From Octopus sinensis (lineage: Eukaryota), in NCBI RefSeq assembly GCF_006345805.1, contig NW_021826172.1, positions 1 to 13,333 of the forward strand: 13,333 nucleotides of DNA. The letters are read 5' to 3'. The translations under genes were made by a program, and so were the position numbers. Shown here in pieces: positions 2,067 through 13,146 of this stretch; the first letter of the stretch is position 1; each line of letters opens with the position of its first letter. The notes beneath the pieces are model-generated. The model was not told the DNA's origin. It made no database searches and worked only from the letters and a program-made list of their open reading frames with translations.

Positions 2067-2092
<26 letters not shown>
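2067..2092. repeat. (TA)n microsatellite abutting the left end of the fold-back
   Basis: Pure TA run running directly into TATAAAATATTATTAGAGAC, the start of the left arm. Confidence 0.95.
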
Positions 2093-2098
<6 letters not shown>

Positions 2099-2183
2099 TA
2101 TTAGAGACAAAACCACTATTTTGCAAAACAAACAGGAAAAACTTAATCAATACATAAATTTTAATAAATAGTCAAAATAACCG

Positions 2184-2226
2184 CCACTACAATTGTTTCT
2201 TGTCTTGATCGACAATCTTCAGGTGG
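2184..2226 (-). ncRNA. Minimal type I hammerhead ribozyme motif (copy 1)
   Basis: Minus strand reads CCAC-CUGAAGA-UUGUC-GAUCAA-GACAA-GAAA-C-AAUU-G-UA/GUGG: core CUGANGA, 5-bp stem II, GAAA, short stem III, GUA cleavage triplet, 4-bp stem I (CCAC/GUGG). Predicted cut between 2188 and 2187. Confidence 0.85.
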
Positions 2227-2316
2227 ACTTCCAATCTAAAATATCAATATTTTAAAATATAAAAATAATAATTTTTAAAATAATTAAAGTATGAATGAAA
2301 AAAAATATAAATAATA

Positions 2317-2434
2317 ATCCATATATAACCTATATATAATCCATATATAATCAATATATAAACAATATATAAACTAAAATAAACCTATCAACAATTAAAT
2401 ATAAAATATAAAATATAAAATATAAAATATAAAA
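2317..2434. repeat. Short tandem repeats inside the arm: ~11-12-mer (ATCCATATATA-like) and (TATAAAA)n
   Basis: About five degenerate 11-12-nt units at ~2317-2373 and about five TATAAAA units at ~2398-2434. Mirrored in the right arm at ~7094-7210. Confidence 0.8.
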
Positions 2435-2665
2435 CAAAACAAAAAAATAATAATTATATAATAATAAACTATATATACACCCATACACATATACCTAATT
2501 ATATATAACCATATCTAACTACATACACTAAATCACAACCCTATATATATATCCCTATACATACACATAAAAACGTCTAGGCAACTATAAATAATAAAAT
2601 AGCTAAATACTTCAACACAATACTTATTCATACTCCCACACACACACACATACAACCCACATTCA

Positions 2666-4257
2666 CGCTCTAGAAAAACGGACATCACTTAAAATTATGA
2701 ACGGAGAAATGGAATAAATGGAATTAAAAATTATATTCACTTGGTAAAACGAACACTACTTAAAAATTATGAATGAAACAATGCAATAAAACAACAGACA
2801 TCGCAAATAGACACAAATTACTACGAATTCCTTAACAAACCTACCATGATAAACCAAAACTATAAAAACATATAATGATAAAATCTCCCTTTACTAAACT
2901 CTATAACATACCTATATAGCAATCCCCCTAACCTAAACATTCACACACAAATACACACACGTAAACCACACACCCACGACATATACAAATACCCACACCA
3001 CTTACACATACCTATACATACATATAAACCTCAACATATACTCCAAAAACCCACTCAACCCCACACAGACAAATAAACACAAAAATTATGAATGGATTCT
3101 TTTATAAAACTACCATGATAAGCTAAAACTCACAAAACATAAATGATAAAACCTCCCTTTACTAAACACTATAACATACTTATATAGCAATCCCTTTAAC
3201 CTATACATTCACACACAAATACACACACGTAAACCACACACCCATAACAAATACAAACACCCACCCCACTCACACACACCCACAAGTACATATAAGCCTC
3301 AACATATACACCAAACAAAATTACTTTACCAAGGAACTTAACATATGTATAAAAAGTATAACCGCTCTGGAAACGAACATCTTTTAAAATAATGAATGGA
3401 GAAATGGAATAAATGGAATTAAAAATAATATTCACGTGGCAAAACGAACACCACTCAAAAATTATGAATGAAACAATGTAATAAAAAACATCAACATCGA
3501 AAATAGACAAATTACCACGAATTCCCTAAAAAAACCATGATAAACCAAAACTCTTAAAAACATATAACGATAAAATCTCCCTTTGCTAAACTCTATAAAC
3601 AAACCTATATAGCAATCCCCCAAACAAACATTCACACACAAAAACACACACGTAAACCACAGACCCACGACTTATACACATACCTATACTAACTTATAAA
3701 CCTCAATATACACCAAAAACCCACTCCCCTCCCCCACAGACAAATTAACACATACATCCCAAAACCTAAATAACAAACCCATATACACATTCACACACAA
3801 AACACACACACACGCAAAACACACACACACAAACAGATACATATACTCCCTCACATATACGCATATACATACTCACTAAACTCGATATATACAACAATAT
3901 TTACACACCCACACTCATACAGATAAATAATTATACAACTAAAAACTCACACACAATCTCATATACATAAACACTCCAAAAAAAAACAACATTAAATACA
4001 TCGTAATTAACCAGAATATCAAAAATAACAATATGACATAAGGAGAAATAAAATACATACTTACAAGTCAGTTTCAAATTATGAAGTGAAATTAAATTCT
4101 TAGCCGTTAAAAAACCAAACCAAAATTACGTTACCATAGAAATATAACTTATGTAAAAAAAGAATACGCGCCATGGAAAGTAAACGTCATTTAAAATTAT
4201 GAATGGAGAAATAGAATAAATGGAACTAAAAACTATAGCCACGTGGCAAACCAACAC
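2666..4257 (+). repeat. Hierarchical diverged direct subrepeats (mirrored in the right arm)
   Basis: Module A (..AAAATTATGAAYGGAGAAATRGAATAAATGGAA..) at ~2666, ~3363, ~4167. Module B (CCATGATAA..CTCCCTTT..TATATAGCAATCCC) at ~2843, ~3113, ~3535. Each B is followed by CATTCACACACAAA..ACACACGTAAACCAC and a CCTCAAYATA.. module. Confidence 0.9.
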
Positions 4258-5273
4258 ATGCAATTCCAGGTACGCGCGAATTGCATGTGAGCCTCAACAT
4301 ATACACCAAACGGCCACTCCCGCCTTATACGGACAAATAAACACATACATCCCCAAAAATGGGCGTAATCCCACTCACACCAATCATATGTATACAATTA
4401 TACACACTAGAATAATACATAACTAACCCAAATATACAGAACATATTAAAAATCACCAACAAACCACCATCACAAATGAAACCTACACCCATACAATGAC
4501 AAAACTCCCCCCTCTATACCCAATTACACCCACATAGCAATCCCAATATATTCATCCATACATGGACGCACGTGCGTGAAGCACATGCACACAATAAATA
4601 CGTACAACCCCCCAATACACACTCATATACATACGTATCAAGCTCGACATCCACAGCAATACGCTTACACCCATCACACCCAGATGGGTGAATTGCACAA
4701 CCAGTGAACGCACACACACACGTGTGCGTATTTTGATTGTGCAACTCGCCCATATGCATGTATGTATGCGGGCGCGATTACATTGTTGCACATATCGAGC
4801 CCAACTAGCATGCATATGTACATGTGAGGGGGTACACGTACATGCCGTGCGCGTGTACCCCCTGCATTTATACCCGTGCGTGAATATACACATGGAGACT
4901 ACCACACAGGTACAAATGTGTATAGTAATGGGAGCCCCATCACTACACTCAATGTATACTCTCACCCATCCGCACGGATTGAAAGCGAATCTCCGGTGTA
5001 TATGTTGAGGCTTATATGTAGCGCTGTGGAGTTGAACGTCGTTGAAATTGTGAATGAATGGGTGGAGTTGGGAATTGTAACGGGTGGTGGGCTAGCGTTG
5101 CTTGGAATTGGGAATGGAATAGTGTAGTAGTAAGGCAGGCATCGAGAATAGATTTGGGTTACTGCAAGTTGTTTGTTAGAGAGCTGCTAAGATGAGCTAA
5201 AGCTCATAATTGTACATAATTTATTATGGTAGTTTTATTAAAGAATCCATTCATAATAAATTTTTTTTAAGTA
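4258..5273. other. 1016-bp spacer/loop of the fold-back, CpG- and hairpin-rich
   Basis: Not symmetric overall. Contains several local stem-loops, fragments of arm modules and the point where strand skew reverses. Confidence 0.85.
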
Positions 5274-7431
5274 GTGTTGGTTTGCCACGTGGATATAGTT
5301 TTTAGTTCCATTTATTCTATTTCTCCATTCATAATTTTAAATGACGTTTACTTTCCATGGCGCGTATTCTTTTTTTACATAAGTTATATTTCTATGGTAA
5401 CGTAATTTTGGTTTGGTTTTTTTAACGGCTAAGAATTTAATTTCACTTCATAATTTGAAACTGACTTGTAAGTATGTATTTTATTTCTCCTTATGTCATA
5501 TTGTTATTTTTGATATTCTGGTTAATTACGATGTATTAATGTTGTTTTTTTTATTGGAGTGTTTATGTATATGAGATTGTGTGTGAGTTTTTAGTTGTAT
5601 AATTATTTATCTGTATGAGTGTGGGTGTGTAAATATTGTTGTATATATCGAGTTTAGTGAGTATGTATATGCGTATATGTGAGGGAGTATATGTATCTGT
5701 GGTGTGTGTGTTTTGCGTGTGTGTGTGTTGTGTGTGTGTGAATGTGTATATGGGTTTGTTATTTAGGTTTTGGGATGTATGTGTAATTTGTCTGTGTGGG
5801 GGGGAGTGGTTTTTGGTGTATATTGAGGTTTATAAGTTAGTATAGGTATGTGTATAAGTCGTGGGTCTGTGGTTTACGTGTGTGTTTTTTGTGTGTGAAT
5901 GTTTAGGTAGGGGGATTGCTATATAGGTTTGTTATAGAGTTTAGCAAAGGGAGATTTTATCGTTATATGTTTTTAAGAGTTTTGGTTTATCATGGTTTTT
6001 TTTAGGGAATTCGTGGTAATTTGTCTATTTTCGATGTTGGTTGTTTTATTACATTGTTTCATTCATAATTTTGAGTGGTGTTCGTTTTGCCACGTGAATA
6101 TTATTTTTAATTCCATTTATTCCATTTCTCCATTCATTATTTAAAAGATGTTCGTTTCCAGAGCGGTTATACTTTTTATACATATGTTAAGTTCCTTGGT
6201 AAAGTAATTTGTTTTTGGTGTATATGTTGAGGCTTATATGTACTTGTGGGTGTGTGTGTGAGTGGGGTGGGTGTTTGTATTTGTTATGGGTGTGTGGTTT
6301 ACGTGTGTGTATTTGTGTGTGAATGTATAGGTTAAAGGGATTGCTATATAAGTATGTTATAGTGTTTAGTAAAGGGAGGTTTTATCATTTATGTTTTGTG
6401 AGTTTTAGCTTATCATGGTAGTTTTATAAAAGAATCCATTCATAATTTTTGTGTTTATTTGTCTGTGTGGGGTTGAGTGGGTTTTGGAGTATATGTTGAG
6501 GTTATATGTATGTATAGGTATGTGTAAGTGGTGTGGGTATTTGTATATGTCGTGGGTGTGTGGTTTACGTGTGTGTATTTGTGTGTGAATGTTTAGGTTA
6601 GGGGGATTGCTATATAGGTATGTTATAGAGTTTAGTAAAGGGAGATTTTATCATTATATGTTTTTATGAGTTTTGGTTTATCATGGTAGGTTTGTTAAGG
6701 AATTCGTAGTAATTTGTGTCTATTTGCGATGTCTGTTGTTTTATTGCATTGTTTCATTCATAATTTTTAAGTAGTGTTCGTTTTACCAAGTGAATATAAT
6801 TTTTAATTCCATTTATTCATTTCTCCGTTCATATTTTAAGTGATGTCCGTTTTTCTAGAGCGTGAATGTGGGTTGTATGTGTGTGTGTGTGGGAGTATGA
6901 ATAAGTATTGTGTTGAAGTATTTAGCTATTTTATTTATTTATAGTTGCCTAGACGTTTTTATGTGTATGTATAGGGATATATATAGGGGTGTGATTTAGT
7001 GTATGTAGTTAGATATGGTATATATAATTAGGTATATGTGTGTTGGGTGTATATATAGTTTATTATTATATAATTATTATTTTTTTGTTTTGTTTTATAT
7101 TTTATATTTTATATTTTATATTTTATATTTAATTGTTGATAGGTTTATTTTAGTTTATATATTGTTTATATATTGATTTATATGGATTATATATAGGTTA
7201 TATATGGATTATATATTTATATTTTTTCATTCATACTTTAATTATTTTAAAATTATTATTTTTATATTTTAAATATTGATATTTTAGATTGGAAGTCCAC
7301 CTGAAGATTGTCGATCAAGACAAGAAACAATTGTAGTGGCGGTTTTTTGACTATTTATTAAATTTTATGTATGATTAAGTCTTTCCTGTTTGTTTTGCAA
7401 AATAGTGGTTTGTCTCTAATAATATTTTATA
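5274..7431 (-). repeat. Right arm of long inverted repeat (2158 bp)
   Basis: Reverse complement of 2089-4257; 5274-5510 vs 4021-4257 showed only one substitution by eye. Confidence 0.97.
7297..7339 (+). ncRNA. Minimal type I hammerhead ribozyme motif (copy 2)
   Basis: CCAC 7297-7300, CTGAAGA 7301-7307, stem II TTGTC 7308-7312 / GACAA 7319-7323, GAAA 7324-7327, C-AATT-G 7328-7333, TA 7334-7335, GTGG 7336-7339. Predicted cleavage after 7335. Identical to copy 1. Confidence 0.85.
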
Positions 7432-7442
7432 ATATTTTACTA

Positions 7443-8209: not shown

Positions 8210-8429
8210 GAAGGTGTGCTGACAGGTTCGTTAGCACGCTGGAGAGGATACTTAGCGGCATTTCGTCTGTATTTGTGTTCTGATTTCAAATTCCTCCGAG
8301 GTCAAGTTTGCTTTCACCGTCTCGGGGATCGATGAAATAAGTACCAGTTGAATACTGGGGTGGGTGAAATCGATTATTCTCTTTCATCACAAAATTCCAG
8401 GCCTTCTGCGTCTAATTGGAGAATTATTA
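8210..8429 (+). mobile_element. Diverged tRNA-derived SINE-like element
   Basis: Head (GTTCGTTAGCACGC..CTTAGCGGCATTTCGTCTG), decayed B-box (TTTCAAATTCC) and body (CCGAGGTCAAGTTTGCTTTCA..AAATAAGTACCAGTT..ACTGGGG) are homologous to the copies at 8734-9307. Confidence 0.75.
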
Positions 8430-8441
8430 CAAAGAACATTT

Positions 8442-8511
8442 AAGCCAACGAGGTGGCAGAATCGTTACTACGACGACAGGAATGCTTTGCCATATTTCGT
8501 CTGTATTTACG
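8442..8511 (+). mobile_element. 5' fragment of the same SINE family
   Basis: A-box-like TGGCAGAATCG followed by AATGCTTTGCCATATTTCGTCTG, matching the heads at 8210 and 9156. Confidence 0.6.
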
Positions 8512-8733
8512 CCACTCTGCGATCGAATTCTGCTGATGTACCACTACAGAATCTGCACTCAACCATTTTGAATGTAAATCATGTATATTTTTCATTAAGT
8601 CATTTATTATATTTTTCGAGTTATTCTCTTGTTGCTATCGCTGTCGTCGTTGCTGTTGCTATCTTTGCTATTATTGTCGCTGCTATTCAATTTCGTGTGG
8701 GCGCCTGCATATTGTTGATAATTCTCACGCCTT

Positions 8734-9123
8734 CACGCCAGGCGAAATGCTTAGCCGTAATTCATCTGCCGCTACTTTCTGAGTTCAAATTCCGCCGAGG
8801 TCAACTTTGCCTTTCATCTTTTCGGAGTCGATTAAATAAGTACCAGTTACGTACTGGGGTCGATATAATCGACTTAATCCGTTTGTCTGTCCTTGTGTGT
8901 CCTCTCTGTGTTTAGCCTCGTGTGGGTAGTAAACAAATAAGTAATTCATCTGCCGCTAGGTTCTGAGTTCAAATTCCGCCGAGGTCGACTTTGCCTTTCA
9001 TCCTTTCGGGGTCGATTAAATAAGTACCAGTTACGCTCTGGGGTCGATATAATCGACTCAATCCGTTTGTCTGTTCTTGCTTGTCCTTTCTATGATTAGC
9101 CCCTTGTAGGCAATAAAGAAATA
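8734..9123 (+). mobile_element. 5'-truncated SINE with a tandemly duplicated 184-bp body
   Basis: Units at 8757-8940 and 8941-9123 both begin GTAATTCATCTGCCGCTA and carry the B-box GAGTTCAAATTCC. Flanked by GATAATTCTCACG at 8717-8729 and 9124-9136. Confidence 0.85.
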
Positions 9124-9155
9124 GATAATTCTCACGGCCTCATTATTTCCAGTAC

Positions 9156-9307
9156 AAAGACGGCGAGCTGGCGGAGTCGTTAGCACATTAGACAAAATAT
9201 TTAGCAGCGTTTCTCCCAAGCTCTTCATGTTCTGGCTCCAAATTATCCTTCCATCCTTTCGATAAAATAAAGTGCTTGGGAAGAACTGAGAGTCGATAAA
9301 ATCGACT
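9156..9307 (+). mobile_element. Diverged, internally deleted copy of the same SINE family
   Basis: A-box TGGCGGAGTCG in AAAGACGGCGAGCTGGCGGAGTCGTTAGCAC, then TTCCATCCTTTCGATAAAATAAAGT and GTCGATAAAATCGACT, matching the body of the 184-bp unit. Confidence 0.7.
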
Positions 9308-9783: not shown

Positions 9784-9797
9784 TAATAATAATGATG

Positions 9798-9831
<34 letters not shown>

Positions 9832-9869
9832 CAACAACAATAATAATAATCATAATAACAATAACAATC

Positions 9870-9936
<67 letters not shown>

Positions 9937-9979
9937 TAATAATGATAATAATAATGATAGTAATAAGATAATAATAATG

Positions 9980-10018
<39 letters not shown>

Positions 10019-10039
10019 GTAATAATAATGATAATAATA

Positions 10040-10085
<46 letters not shown>
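9784..10085. repeat. Long (AAT)n microsatellite with AAC/GAT/CAT variants
   Basis: About 300 bp; source of the poly-N/I/Y/L ORFs. Confidence 0.97.
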
Positions 10086-10327: not shown

Positions 10328-10447
10328 ATTTCTTATGAGGAATATCCTTTGCTTGATGTTATATACTGGTCCTGTACTCGACCAGGTGATCCATCGGTTT
10401 TTCTCTGATGCGTGTCGATGGAGCATGGTATGGCAAAGCAAAGCGGA

Positions 10448-10530
10448 GAAGAAGAAGAAGAAGAAGAAGAAGAAGAAGAAGAAGAAGAAGAAGAAGAAGA
10501 AGAAGAAGAAGAAGAAGAAGAAGAAGAAGA
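10448..10530. repeat. Pure (GAA)n microsatellite
   Basis: Uninterrupted GAA run of ~83 nt. Confidence 0.97.
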
Positions 10531-10843: not shown

Positions 10844-10844
<1 letters not shown>

Positions 10845-10931
<87 letters not shown>

Positions 10932-11559: not shown

Positions 11560-12426
11560 TATGTGTCTATATATTTATTTATCCACCAATCAATTTAGCT
11601 ATACACGTCTATATACGTGTATGTATCTATCTGGTGTATATATCTGTCTATTTATGTTTTTATCTAGCTCCCTGAATTTACAGACACAAGCATACAGACA
11701 CACACTCACACAAAAAATACACATACATATACACATATAAACACACAATAATGCGTATTTATACACGCACAGGGGAGGCTTGTTAGATAGATATATATTT
11801 CTCCAAGAATGTTTATATGTATATGTTCGTGTGTGTCTTAGTATTATGTATGTATGTGTGTATGTATGTAGGTGCATATATACAAATTATAACTGCTTAC
11901 CTAAATATCTAGCTATCAATCTCTTTGTAAGTATATCTATCTACCCACCCATAAATTTATCTGTATATCTATATCTATGAATCTATCTATCTATTTATCT
12001 GTATGTATGTATGTATGTATGTATGTATATATATATATATATACGTTTAAATATTTGTTGTGCAAGATTTTTTATGTATATATATATATACATTTATATA
12101 TATATACATATATATATAAATATATGTACACACATATATATATATATATACATGCATGTATACATATAGATATAAATTTACACATACGTATACGTGTATA
12201 CATATGCATATATAATGTATATGTACGTTATATTCACATATATATATATATATACGTGTGTATATATATGTATATATGCATATACATATATATTGTATAT
12301 AAATGCACACGCTCAGGAATGGCTTGGTTAGATAGATATGCGTGTATGAATATTTCTGTGTATGTGTGTATGTGTCTATCGGTGTCTCTGTGTGTGTGTG
12401 TGCGTGTGTGTGAATGTACGTGTGTA

Positions 12427-12472
<46 letters not shown>
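11560..12472. repeat. Degenerate (TA)/(TATG)/(TATC)/(CA)/(TG) low-complexity region
   Basis: Direct inspection; ends in a near-pure (TG)n at ~12421-12472. Confidence 0.85.
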
Positions 12473-12475
<3 letters not shown>

Positions 12476-12740
12476 ATCTACGTAAATATATGACTGATTA
12501 GAATGACAGACCCTGTTTTGATACATGATTTCGATCAACGCCAATAGAAGCCATTTAACTTTTCCTCCTTGTATCAAACAAAACATATTTTGCTTGGATA
12601 ATGGAACGACCATGCCGTCGCAACCTTCCACATATGAATATGCATGCGCACGCTTATATACAATTATATATTTTTTCATTCGGGCACACATTAACGCACA
12701 TACACAAAACTATAGACACCTACTCAACCATAAAATTGTA

Positions 12741-13115
12741 TACACACACACAAACACACACACACACATACACACACATACACACAAACACGCACACACA
12801 CATACATACACACACTAACACACACAAACATACATACACACAATCACGCACACACACACATACACACTCACACACACCAACACACAGAGAAACACACCAC
12901 ACACACACACATACACAACCACACACACACACAAACACACACGCACACAAACACACACACCAATCACACACACACACAACACAAACACACACACCACACA
13001 AACCACACACACACACAAACACACACACACACACACAAACACGCGCAGCACACACACACACACACAAACACATACACGCACACACACACACATACACACA
13101 CACACACACATACAT

Positions 13116-13146
<31 letters not shown>

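What the first reader, a model, noticed from the sequence alone, without database searches (positions are those of the whole stretch)
2089..7431. Near-perfect 2.16 kb inverted duplication: real fold-back or long-read artefact?
Seen: the arms match end to end, and subrepeat-diagnostic variants are mirrored by position (CACTTGGTAAAACG in the outer module and CACGTGGCAAAACG in the middle module on both arms). The inversion therefore postdates subrepeat divergence. Differences are mostly +/-1 changes in homopolymers or doublets (GACAAAACC vs GACAAACC; AAAATTATG vs AAAATATG; AATGGAATA vs AATGAATA), a typical long-read error profile. True identity may thus be near 100%, meaning a very recent event, concerted evolution or a chimeric read. 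A 1-kb non-symmetric spacer with no adapter sequence argues against a simple missed-adapter palindrome. If real, it could form cruciforms or a 2-kb dsRNA.
Basis: partly seen in the sequence, partly recalled or inferred. Interest (0 to 1): 0.7.

Follow-up and report, generated by a model that had tools for sequence, protein, structure and literature searches.

The report
Foldback-style inverted repeat in octopus DNA
A 5.3-kb non-coding stretch of an octopus-like genome consists of two almost identical 2.2-kb mirror-image arms around a 1-kb middle; it looks like a real but ordinary foldback-type repeat, and the small differences between its arms are mostly sequencing errors.

Summary
Arms 2089-4257 and 5274-7431 align end to end in inverted orientation with 2133 matches, 9 substitutions and 37 one- or two-base indels.

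Old divergence in the same window (module vs module, SINE vs SINE) has 3-21 substitutions per indel. The arms have 0.24, and their indels are randomly spaced on both arms. So most arm differences are probably long-read consensus errors, and true identity is probably at least 99.6 %.

A simple read artefact is unlikely. The symmetry stops sharply at unrelated flanks, the turn-around is 1016 bp, and no adapter is present. The "spacer" is made of old, 60-65 % diverged copies of the arms' own ~700-bp module, and their orientation flips near 4720.

The layout matches foldback transposons such as Tetris: terminal domain, tandem-repeat domain, inner domain, non-coding middle. But there is no 7-10 bp target-site duplication, and no other copy could be reached. 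Whether it is mobile is therefore open, as is read-level confirmation.

The host is an octopus-like cephalopod. This is an ordinary kind of feature, and interest is low to moderate.

The parts
2089..4257 (+). Left arm (2169 bp), A/C-rich on the + strand
   Evidence: Inverted alignment to 5274-7431: 2133 matches, 9 substitutions, 37 short indels
2089..2665 (+). Terminal ('flanking') domain of the left arm. About 18-30 % GC, no module homology, short tandem repeats: 23-mer at 2238-2282, 11-mer x5.9 at 2314-2384, AAATATA x5.4 at 2397-2434
   Evidence: TRF, composition profile, self-blast shows no paralogue inside the arm
2666..3362 (+). Module copy A (about 700-bp unit). It includes an internal 266-bp duplication, 2804-3047 vs 3070-3315, at 85 %
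   Evidence: Self-blast: 2666-3081 vs 3363-3752 at 83.6 %; 2804-3047 vs 3070-3315 at 85 %
3363..3752 (+). Module copy B
   Evidence: Diagnostic variant CACGTGGCAAAACG at 3433, mirrored at 6083
3753..4113 (+). Inner CA-rich domain of the arm, a degenerate module tail (3764-3930 matches 2910-3076 at 71 %)
   Evidence: 17-mer repeat at 3792-3831
4114..4257 (+). Partial module copy C. The arm ends in the middle of the unit
   Evidence: 3310-3451 vs 4114-4257 at 81 %; variant CACGTGGCAAACC at 4240, mirrored at 5279
4258..5273 (.). Middle domain ('spacer'), 1016 bp, GC 44-52 % in its centre, non-coding, built from degenerate module copies in both orientations
   Evidence: no Pfam hit in any ORF; no homologues of its 137-aa ORF
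4258..4286 (.). Perfect 9-bp hairpin ATGCAATTC-N11-GAATTGCAT at the inner junction of the left arm. It is filler that replaces about 280 bp which the other side retains
   Evidence: Read from the sequence; the arm-2 side continues collinearly with the module to 4995 while the arm-1 side jumps
4279..4718 (+). Old module remnants in + orientation (60-65 % to the arm modules)
   Evidence: blastn; z = 8.1 against dinucleotide shuffles, and no signal in the opposite orientation
4687..4752 (.). Symmetry centre: imperfect hairpin GGGTGAATTGCACAA...(CA)nCGTGTG...TTGTGCAACTCGCCC, where module orientation switches
   Evidence: Self-inverted alignment 4505-4934 centred at about 4720, z about 12
4829..4862 (.). 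Second local hairpin: GGGGGTACACG / CGTGTACCCCC, 11-bp perfect stems
4995..5273 (-). Old module remnant in - orientation, a collinear continuation of the right arm with no counterpart next to the left arm
   Evidence: 4995-5257 vs 3312-3085 at 64 %; 5220-5269 vs 2853-2808 at 72 %; z = 9.2; 5227-5417 vs 6038-6219 in direct orientation at 76 %
5274..7431 (-). Right arm (2158 bp), mirror image of the left arm with the same domain order
7420..7439 (.). Right tip: 10-bp tandem duplication TAATATTTTA x2 spanning the end of the arm
   Evidence: Read from the sequence

Best explanation
Positions 2089-7431 are most likely a genuine, bounded, non-coding long inverted repeat in a cephalopod (octopus-like) genome, with the architecture of a foldback element.

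Shown:
- Each arm has a 577-bp AT-rich terminal domain with short tandem repeats, then about 2.3 tandem copies of a roughly 700-bp CA-rich module (about 84 % alike), then an inner domain.
- The arms face each other across a 1-kb middle built from much older (60-65 %) copies of the same module. Their orientation flips near 4720.
- The arm differences have an indel-dominated profile, unlike genuine old divergence in the same window.

Inferred:
- The head-to-head arrangement is old. The outer 2.17 kb on each side has been made, or kept, essentially identical, either by a recent inverted duplication or by arm-to-arm gene conversion within the hairpin-forming element.
- A roughly 280-bp deletion next to the left arm created the present asymmetric middle.
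- The apparent 2.4 % arm divergence is mostly residual 1-2-nt indel error of a long-read consensus. The error probably survived because short reads cannot be placed uniquely in the two identical arms. True identity is probably at least 99.6 %.

The element encodes nothing. Any activity would be structural: hairpin or cruciform formation, recombination, and possibly mobilisation in trans as a non-autonomous foldback-type transposon.
For: - Arms and exact boundaries.
- Mirrored module-diagnostic variants. In the four-way module alignment, 66 module-diagnostic columns are mirrored on both arms.
- Internal control: the substitution:indel ratio is 3.0-7.75 between modules and 13.5-21 between SINE copies, but 0.24 between arms. 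In the same four-way alignment, 38 mirrored substitution columns stand against 28 mirrored indel columns, 19 of which are one deletion.
- Indel pattern: spacing is Poisson-like (mean 55.6, sd 52.5) and only mildly enriched in homopolymers. Odd states occur on both arms, 12 vs 9.
- Against a read artefact: flanks are not mirrored (no blast hit; 30 % ungapped identity), there are no Ns, and no adapter is present. The inner ends are 1016 bp apart. Published foldback-artefact reads fold back within about 200 bp and are symmetric about the read midpoint (PMC12870357).
- Middle domain: module remnants with orientation-specific similarity, z = 8.1 for + on the left, z = 9.2 and 5.6 for - on the right. 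Self-inverted similarity centred at about 4720 has z about 12.
- Non-coding.
- Architecture parallels the Tetris foldback element: TIR = flanking domain + tandem repeats about 87 % alike + inner domain, around a non-coding middle (PMC4079207).
- Long inverted repeats are common: 297,317 in 77 invertebrate genomes (PMC8728187).
- Host: the SINE-derived ORF hits an Octopus vulgaris protein.
Against: - No independent reads or assemblies could be reached, so the junctions at 2089, 4257, 5274 and 7431 are supported only by this one sequence.
- An indel error rate of about 0.85 % per arm is high for a finished assembly. The two tandem SINE copies nearby show 0 indels in 184 bp, where about 3 would be expected at that rate. 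Errors would therefore have to be concentrated in the arms; this is inferred, not shown.
- No 7-10 bp target-site duplication is present, and no second copy was found, so mobility is unsupported.
- Recent duplication and ongoing gene conversion cannot be told apart from a single sequence.
Confidence: 0.68

Rival explanations
1. It is specifically a copy of a mobile, non-autonomous Foldback-family DNA transposon. Its 2.17-kb arms are terminal inverted repeats recognised by a transposase encoded elsewhere, and other copies with the same termini are dispersed in the genome. This is a special case of the best explanation.
For: The domain order matches Tetris and other foldback elements: terminal domain, tandem-repeat domain, inner domain, non-coding middle. 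The termini are sharp and identical. There is no coding capacity. A TA or TATA at both tips is compatible with a palindromic TA-type target duplication.
Against: No 7-10 bp TSD is present, as foldback, Tetris and Galileo elements have. The TA/TATA cannot be distinguished from the tip of the inverted repeat in a TA-rich context. There is no second copy in the window or in any reachable collection, although those collections do not hold cephalopod genomes. The middle domain consists of the same module, which also fits local evolution in place.
Confidence: 0.3
2. It is an assembly or long-read artefact. Only one arm exists in the genome, and the second arose from a foldback or chimeric molecule, or from a mis-join, that was carried into the consensus.
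For: The arm differences look like sequencing error, as expected if both arms are noisy readings of one locus. Foldback artefact reads are frequent in long-read data and sometimes carry about 2 kb of sequence between the two segments.
Against: The symmetry ends sharply on both sides at unrelated, non-mirrored flanks of 2.1 kb and 5.9 kb. A single fold-back cannot produce that; two precise switches would be needed. The turn-around is 1016 bp with no adapter. The orientation switch of the module exists independently in the diverged middle domain. The left inner junction carries a deletion plus filler, which points to a multi-step history.
Confidence: 0.15
3. The arm differences are real mutations. 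This would be an older palindrome, about 2 % diverged, whose AT-rich low-complexity arms accumulate mainly small indels.
For: The sequence is rich in short A/T runs. Both arms carry private changes.
Against: Genuine divergence in exactly the same sequence type (module vs module, mirrored on both arms) is dominated by substitutions, about 5:1 or more. Eleven of 37 indels hit non-repeated bases, and the enrichment in long runs is only mild, unlike replication slippage.
Confidence: 0.08
4. The arms are two independent insertions of the same young, roughly 2.17-kb repeat element in opposite orientation 1 kb apart. LIRBase reports this as the commonest origin of long inverted repeats.
For: Both arms have the same start and end points. 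Many long inverted repeats arise this way.
Against: Neither arm has a target-site duplication of its own (sequence at 2088/4258 and 5273/7432). The right arm continues collinearly into the middle domain as an older copy of the module, so 5274 is not an element terminus. The arms end in the middle of a module.
Confidence: 0.05

Closest known systems
Foldback transposons with modular TIRs: Tetris of Drosophila virilis, FB of D. melanogaster, Galileo
   Same: Kilobase-long inverted arms made of a terminal domain, internal tandem repeats (Tetris TIR-220 copies are about 87 % alike inside elements; here about 84 %) and an inner domain. The arms surround a variable, non-coding, AT-rich middle domain (PMC4079207).
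   Different: The repeat unit is about 700 bp with a 266-bp sub-duplication, against 220 bp or 10-31 bp. No 7-10 bp target-site duplication is present. No other copies and no transposase partner are known. The middle domain is itself made of degenerate copies of the arm module. The host is a cephalopod; no paper in the held library links foldback elements with octopus.
Generic long inverted repeats of eukaryotic genomes (LIRBase class)
   Same: The arms exceed 400 nt with at least 80 % match and there is a loop. The total size of 5.3 kb is of the same order as the 3.3-kb invertebrate median. Thousands occur per genome (PMC8728187).
   Different: Most catalogued cases are two adjacent transposon copies. 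Here the arms are module arrays that continue into the loop. Transcription and small RNAs are untested.
Palindromes kept identical by arm-to-arm gene conversion, such as sex-chromosome palindromes (from general knowledge)
   Same: Near-identical arms around a distinct spacer. The arms are far more alike than the paralogous repeats within them, as expected under concerted evolution of the arms.
   Different: The arms are a hundred to a thousand times shorter and contain no genes. Conservation across species and conversion tracts were not testable.
Foldback or palindromic artefact reads in long-read sequencing (PMC12870357; Pacasus, PMC6218980)
   Same: Inverted self-similarity with an error-like difference profile.
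   Different: The symmetry is bounded on both sides, the turn-around is 1 kb rather than under 200 bp, no adapter is present, and the loop has its own diverged symmetry.

Membership tests
Foldback-type DNA transposon (FB / Tetris / Galileo-like architecture) | Long terminal inverted repeats, hundreds of bp to kb | tested here: met
   Arms of 2169 and 2158 bp, at least 97.6 % identical
Foldback-type DNA transposon (FB / Tetris / Galileo-like architecture) | Tandem repeats inside the TIRs, with a domain order of flanking domain, repeat domain, inner domain | tested here: met
   Terminal domain 2089-2665; modules 2666-3752 (84 %); inner domain 3753-4257; short tandem repeats in the terminal domain
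Foldback-type DNA transposon (FB / Tetris / Galileo-like architecture) | Non-coding middle domain of variable content | tested here: met
   4258-5273; ORFs have no Pfam match and no homologues
Foldback-type DNA transposon (FB / Tetris / Galileo-like architecture) | Target-site duplication of 7-10 bp flanking the element | tested here: not met
   A systematic scan of start and end offsets found no 7-10 bp direct repeat. Only the palindromic TA/TATA is shared, and it cannot be separated from the tip of the repeat
Foldback-type DNA transposon (FB / Tetris / Galileo-like architecture) | Several dispersed copies sharing the termini, insertion polymorphism, or an autonomous partner | not testable with these tools
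   No copy in the window or in the metagenome, viral or protein collections. No cephalopod genome is searchable here
Long-read foldback / palindromic chimera artefact | The second segment maps back within about 200 bp of the end of the first (PMC12870357) | tested here: not met
   The inner arm ends are 1016 bp apart
Long-read foldback / palindromic chimera artefact | Mirror symmetry continues to the ends of the molecule, with the breakpoint near its midpoint | tested here: not met
   Symmetry stops at 2089 and 7431. The 2.1-kb and 5.9-kb flanks share no inverted similarity
Long-read foldback / palindromic chimera artefact | Adapter sequence at the turn-around (missed-adapter type) | tested here: not met
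   The best edit distances to the SMRTbell and ONT adapters equal those in shuffled sequence.
Long-read foldback / palindromic chimera artefact | Junctions supported by a single read; arm depth of one copy | not testable with these tools
   No read data available
Hairpin-RNA (hpRNA / endo-siRNA) locus | Inverted arms over 400 nt with at least 80 % match (LIRBase criterion) | tested here: met
Hairpin-RNA (hpRNA / endo-siRNA) locus | Transcription across both arms, small RNAs mapping to the arms, and homology of the arms to a target gene | not testable with these tools
   No expression data. The arms have no coding homology. Rfam gives only sub-threshold simple-repeat hits

The most novel reading that the evidence does not exclude
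The element is one member of an active or recently active foldback-transposon family in octopods, a class not described in cephalopods in the library searched. Alternatively, it is transcribed into a roughly 2.2-kb near-perfect hairpin RNA. In an animal with exceptionally heavy ADAR editing, such an RNA would be a strong double-stranded substrate for hyper-editing or endogenous siRNA production. Either reading would make it a handle on genome rearrangement or dsRNA biology in cephalopods.
Probability: 0.1. Interest if true: 0.55.

Novelty: new member of a known kind. Interest (0 to 1): 0.27.

Why it matters
For genome quality: near-identical inverted arms are places where short-read polishing fails and long-read errors survive. 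Here this creates about 2 % false divergence, which would mislead dating of the duplication. The within-window control used here, the substitution:indel ratio of mirrored paralogous differences against arm-to-arm differences, is a cheap way to recognise that.

For biology: if the structure is real, as seems likely, a 2.2-kb near-perfect palindrome with a 1-kb loop is a potential site of hairpin or cruciform formation, replication stalling and inversion. Foldback-type elements are known to seed satellites and chromosomal inversions in insects. Finding the same architecture in a cephalopod would extend that class. As a class, however, long inverted repeats number in the thousands per invertebrate genome, so a single copy is not remarkable.

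Tried and rejected
- Independent copies via spurious ORFs: the 137-aa spacer ORF and the 104-aa arm ORF have no relatives in the 5.8-billion-protein collection. Exact look-ups of the spacer ORF and a flank ORF are not on record.
- DNA motif scans: the conserved module motif and the terminal-domain 27-mer gave 0 hits in metagenome contigs and viral contigs. These collections do not hold cephalopod genomes, so the result says nothing about copy number.
- Arm asymmetry: a first four-way alignment suggested that arm 2 carries most of the deletions, which would have hinted at single-molecule strand-specific error. Polarising all 37 events against the paralogues removed the asymmetry (12 vs 9; insertions 13, deletions 7). 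One search was a failed script, caused by an aligner end-gap setting.
- RNA genes: none at Rfam gathering score in the window and no tRNAs. A permissive scan gave only sub-threshold miRNA-like hits on simple-repeat hairpins.
- Coding capacity and decayed transposase: no Pfam match for any of the nine ORFs tested, eight inside the element and one spanning its left junction.
- Target-site duplication: none beyond the palindromic TA/TATA.
- Two independent insertions of one element: rejected because the right arm continues collinearly into the middle domain and neither arm has its own duplication.
- Adapters: none found.

Full report
**1. Observation**

The window is eukaryotic. It is AT-rich (mostly 18-40 % GC) and crowded with microsatellites and SINE-like repeats. 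An ORF running through the SINE copies matches a 'Hypothetical predicted protein [Octopus vulgaris]' at 87 % identity over the SINE-derived third. The host is therefore an octopus-like cephalopod.

The reported inverted repeat is real and the coordinates are exact. Positions 2089-4257 align to the reverse complement of 5274-7431 with 2133 matches, 9 substitutions and 37 gap events (31 of one base, 6 of two), about 97.6 % identity. blastn gives 97.5 % with E = 0. The shared tip is TATAAAATATTATTAGAGAC.

**2. Anatomy**

Each arm has three parts:
- a 577-bp very AT-rich terminal domain (2089-2665) with short tandem repeats of 23, 11 and 7 bp;
- a tandem-repeat domain made of a roughly 700-bp CA-rich module. 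Segment 2666-3081 matches 3363-3752 at 84 %, and there is an internal 266-bp duplication (2804-3047 vs 3070-3315) at 85 %;
- an inner domain ending in a partial third module (4114-4257, 81 % to 3310-3451).

Nothing in the element is coding:
- the ORFs are low-complexity read-throughs;
- they have no Pfam match;
- they have no relatives in the protein collection;
- no Rfam family or tRNA is present.

**3. The middle is not an unrelated spacer**

The 1016-bp middle (4258-5273) is richer in GC, but it is built from old copies of the same module.
- 4279-4718 matches the module in + orientation at 60-65 %. Against dinucleotide shuffles z = 8.1, and there is no signal in the opposite orientation.
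- 4995-5273 matches in - orientation (z = 9.2). It is the collinear continuation of the right arm.
- 4720-4994 is weakly - oriented (z = 5.6).
- The middle also shows self-inverted similarity centred at about 4720 (z about 12). An imperfect hairpin lies there (4687-752 region, i.e. 4687-4752), and a second 11-bp hairpin lies at 4829-4862.

Next to the left arm, about 280 bp that the right side retains are missing. They are replaced by about 30 bp of filler that forms a perfect 9-bp hairpin (4258-4286). After that, both sides share 24 bp at 92 % (4284-4307 vs 5018-4995).

So the head-to-head arrangement of module arrays exists at two levels of divergence: 60-65 % in the centre and about 100 % in the outer 2.17 kb. 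That points to a multi-step history.

**4. What the arm differences are**

The window supplies its own control. Differences between paralogous modules that are mirrored on both arms must be genuine and older than the arm identity.
- In the four-way module alignment there are 38 mirrored substitution columns against 28 mirrored indel columns, 19 of which are one deletion.
- Pairwise substitution:indel ratios are 3.0-7.75 between modules and 13.5-21 between SINE copies. Between the arms the ratio is 0.24.

The 37 arm indels also look like random error:
- their spacing is Poisson-like (mean 55.6, sd 52.5);
- 11 hit a non-repeated base and 4 are dinucleotide units;
- long homopolymers are only mildly over-represented;
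- after polarisation against the paralogues, the odd state falls on both arms (12 vs 9), with insertions and deletions on both.

This is the profile of stochastic long-read consensus error, not of replication slippage. Only three isolated substitutions remain (2140, 2159, 4238), so the true identity is probably at least 99.6 % and may be close to 100 %.

I infer, but cannot show, that the errors survived because short reads cannot be placed uniquely in two identical arms. A weak hint supports this. The adjacent tandem SINE pair shows no indel in 184 bp, where about three would be expected at the arms' apparent error rate.

**5. Real or artefact**

Published foldback-artefact reads fold back within about 200 bp and are symmetric about the read midpoint (PMC12870357). 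Here:
- the inner ends are 1016 bp apart;
- the symmetry stops abruptly on both sides, and the 2.1-kb and 5.9-kb flanks share no inverted similarity (no blast hit; 30 % ungapped identity);
- there are no Ns;
- the orientation switch is independently recorded in the diverged middle.

A single template switch or missed adapter cannot produce a bounded internal inverted duplication. I therefore put an artefact at about 15 %. It cannot be excluded, because no reads or second assembly could be reached.

**6. What it is and how it works**

The layout is that of foldback elements as described for Tetris: a flanking domain, internal tandem repeats about 87 % alike, an inner domain, and a non-coding middle of variable content (PMC4079207).

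Against membership, no 7-10 bp target-site duplication is present. The only shared flank is the palindromic TA/TATA, which cannot be separated from the tip of the repeat. Copy number and mobility could not be tested.

I therefore describe it as a genuine long inverted repeat with foldback-element architecture. Its arms were either recently duplicated in inverted orientation or are kept identical by arm-to-arm gene conversion. The asymmetric middle would have been created by a deletion of the kind that stabilises long palindromes; that last point is an inference from general knowledge.

Whether it is a mobile foldback transposon (about 0.3) or a palindrome that evolved in place remains open.

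**7. Novelty and interest**

Long inverted repeats with arms over 400 nt are abundant: 297,317 in 77 invertebrate genomes, with a median size of 3.3 kb (PMC8728187). Foldback-type modular TIRs are a known kind. No paper in the held library links foldback elements to octopus.

At most this is a new member of a known kind. The cruciform and dsRNA suggestions are physically plausible for such a hairpin but untested. The middle alone already folds with long-range pairing.

The most useful practical result is the demonstration that the roughly 2 % arm 'divergence' is largely technical.

Noticed in passing
window 8215-9300: A cluster of at least four tRNA-derived-SINE-like copies: 8215-8373, a partial copy at about 8440-8530, a tandem pair at 8757-8940 and 8941-9124 (period 184, 88 % identity, no indels), and about 9160-9300. 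An ORF through them (8364-8915) matches an annotated 'hypothetical protein' of Octopus vulgaris. That gene model is probably SINE-derived.
   Followed up: partly
window 9784-10083, 10447-10530, 1284-1490, 10844-10931, 12742-13146: Unusually long microsatellites: (TAA) about 100 units, a perfect (AGA)28, (AGA) about 67, (CT)44 and (AC) about 204.
   Followed up: no
window 12339-12501 vs 12684-12897: A (TG)n tract and an (AC)n tract about 210-290 bp apart form a second, low-complexity inverted pair, 71-77 % complementary. It is a by-product of oppositely oriented dinucleotide repeats, not a duplication.
   Followed up: no
window about 710, 795 and 1237: The motif TGATCATGC(T/G)TATATATA recurs three times at the edges of (TA)n tracts. 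It may be a small repeat unit or MITE-like fragment associated with the TA microsatellites.
   Followed up: no
window 7420-7439: The right tip of the element carries a 10-bp tandem duplication, TAATATTTTA x2, that has no counterpart at the left tip.
   Followed up: partly
window 4258-4286: A perfect 9-bp inverted repeat (ATGCAATTC, 11-nt loop, GAATTGCAT) sits exactly at the inner breakpoint of the left arm. It lies inside filler that replaces about 280 bp retained on the other side. It may be a footprint of the repair event that made the palindrome asymmetric.
   Followed up: partly
window 3622-3626 vs 5905-5909: One arm-to-arm difference is a clustered multi-base change: CCCCCAAACAAAC on arm 1 against CCCCCTACCTAAAC on arm 2. 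The arm-2 state matches the paralogous module, so arm 1 carries the odd state. Such clusters are typical of local consensus failure.
   Followed up: partly
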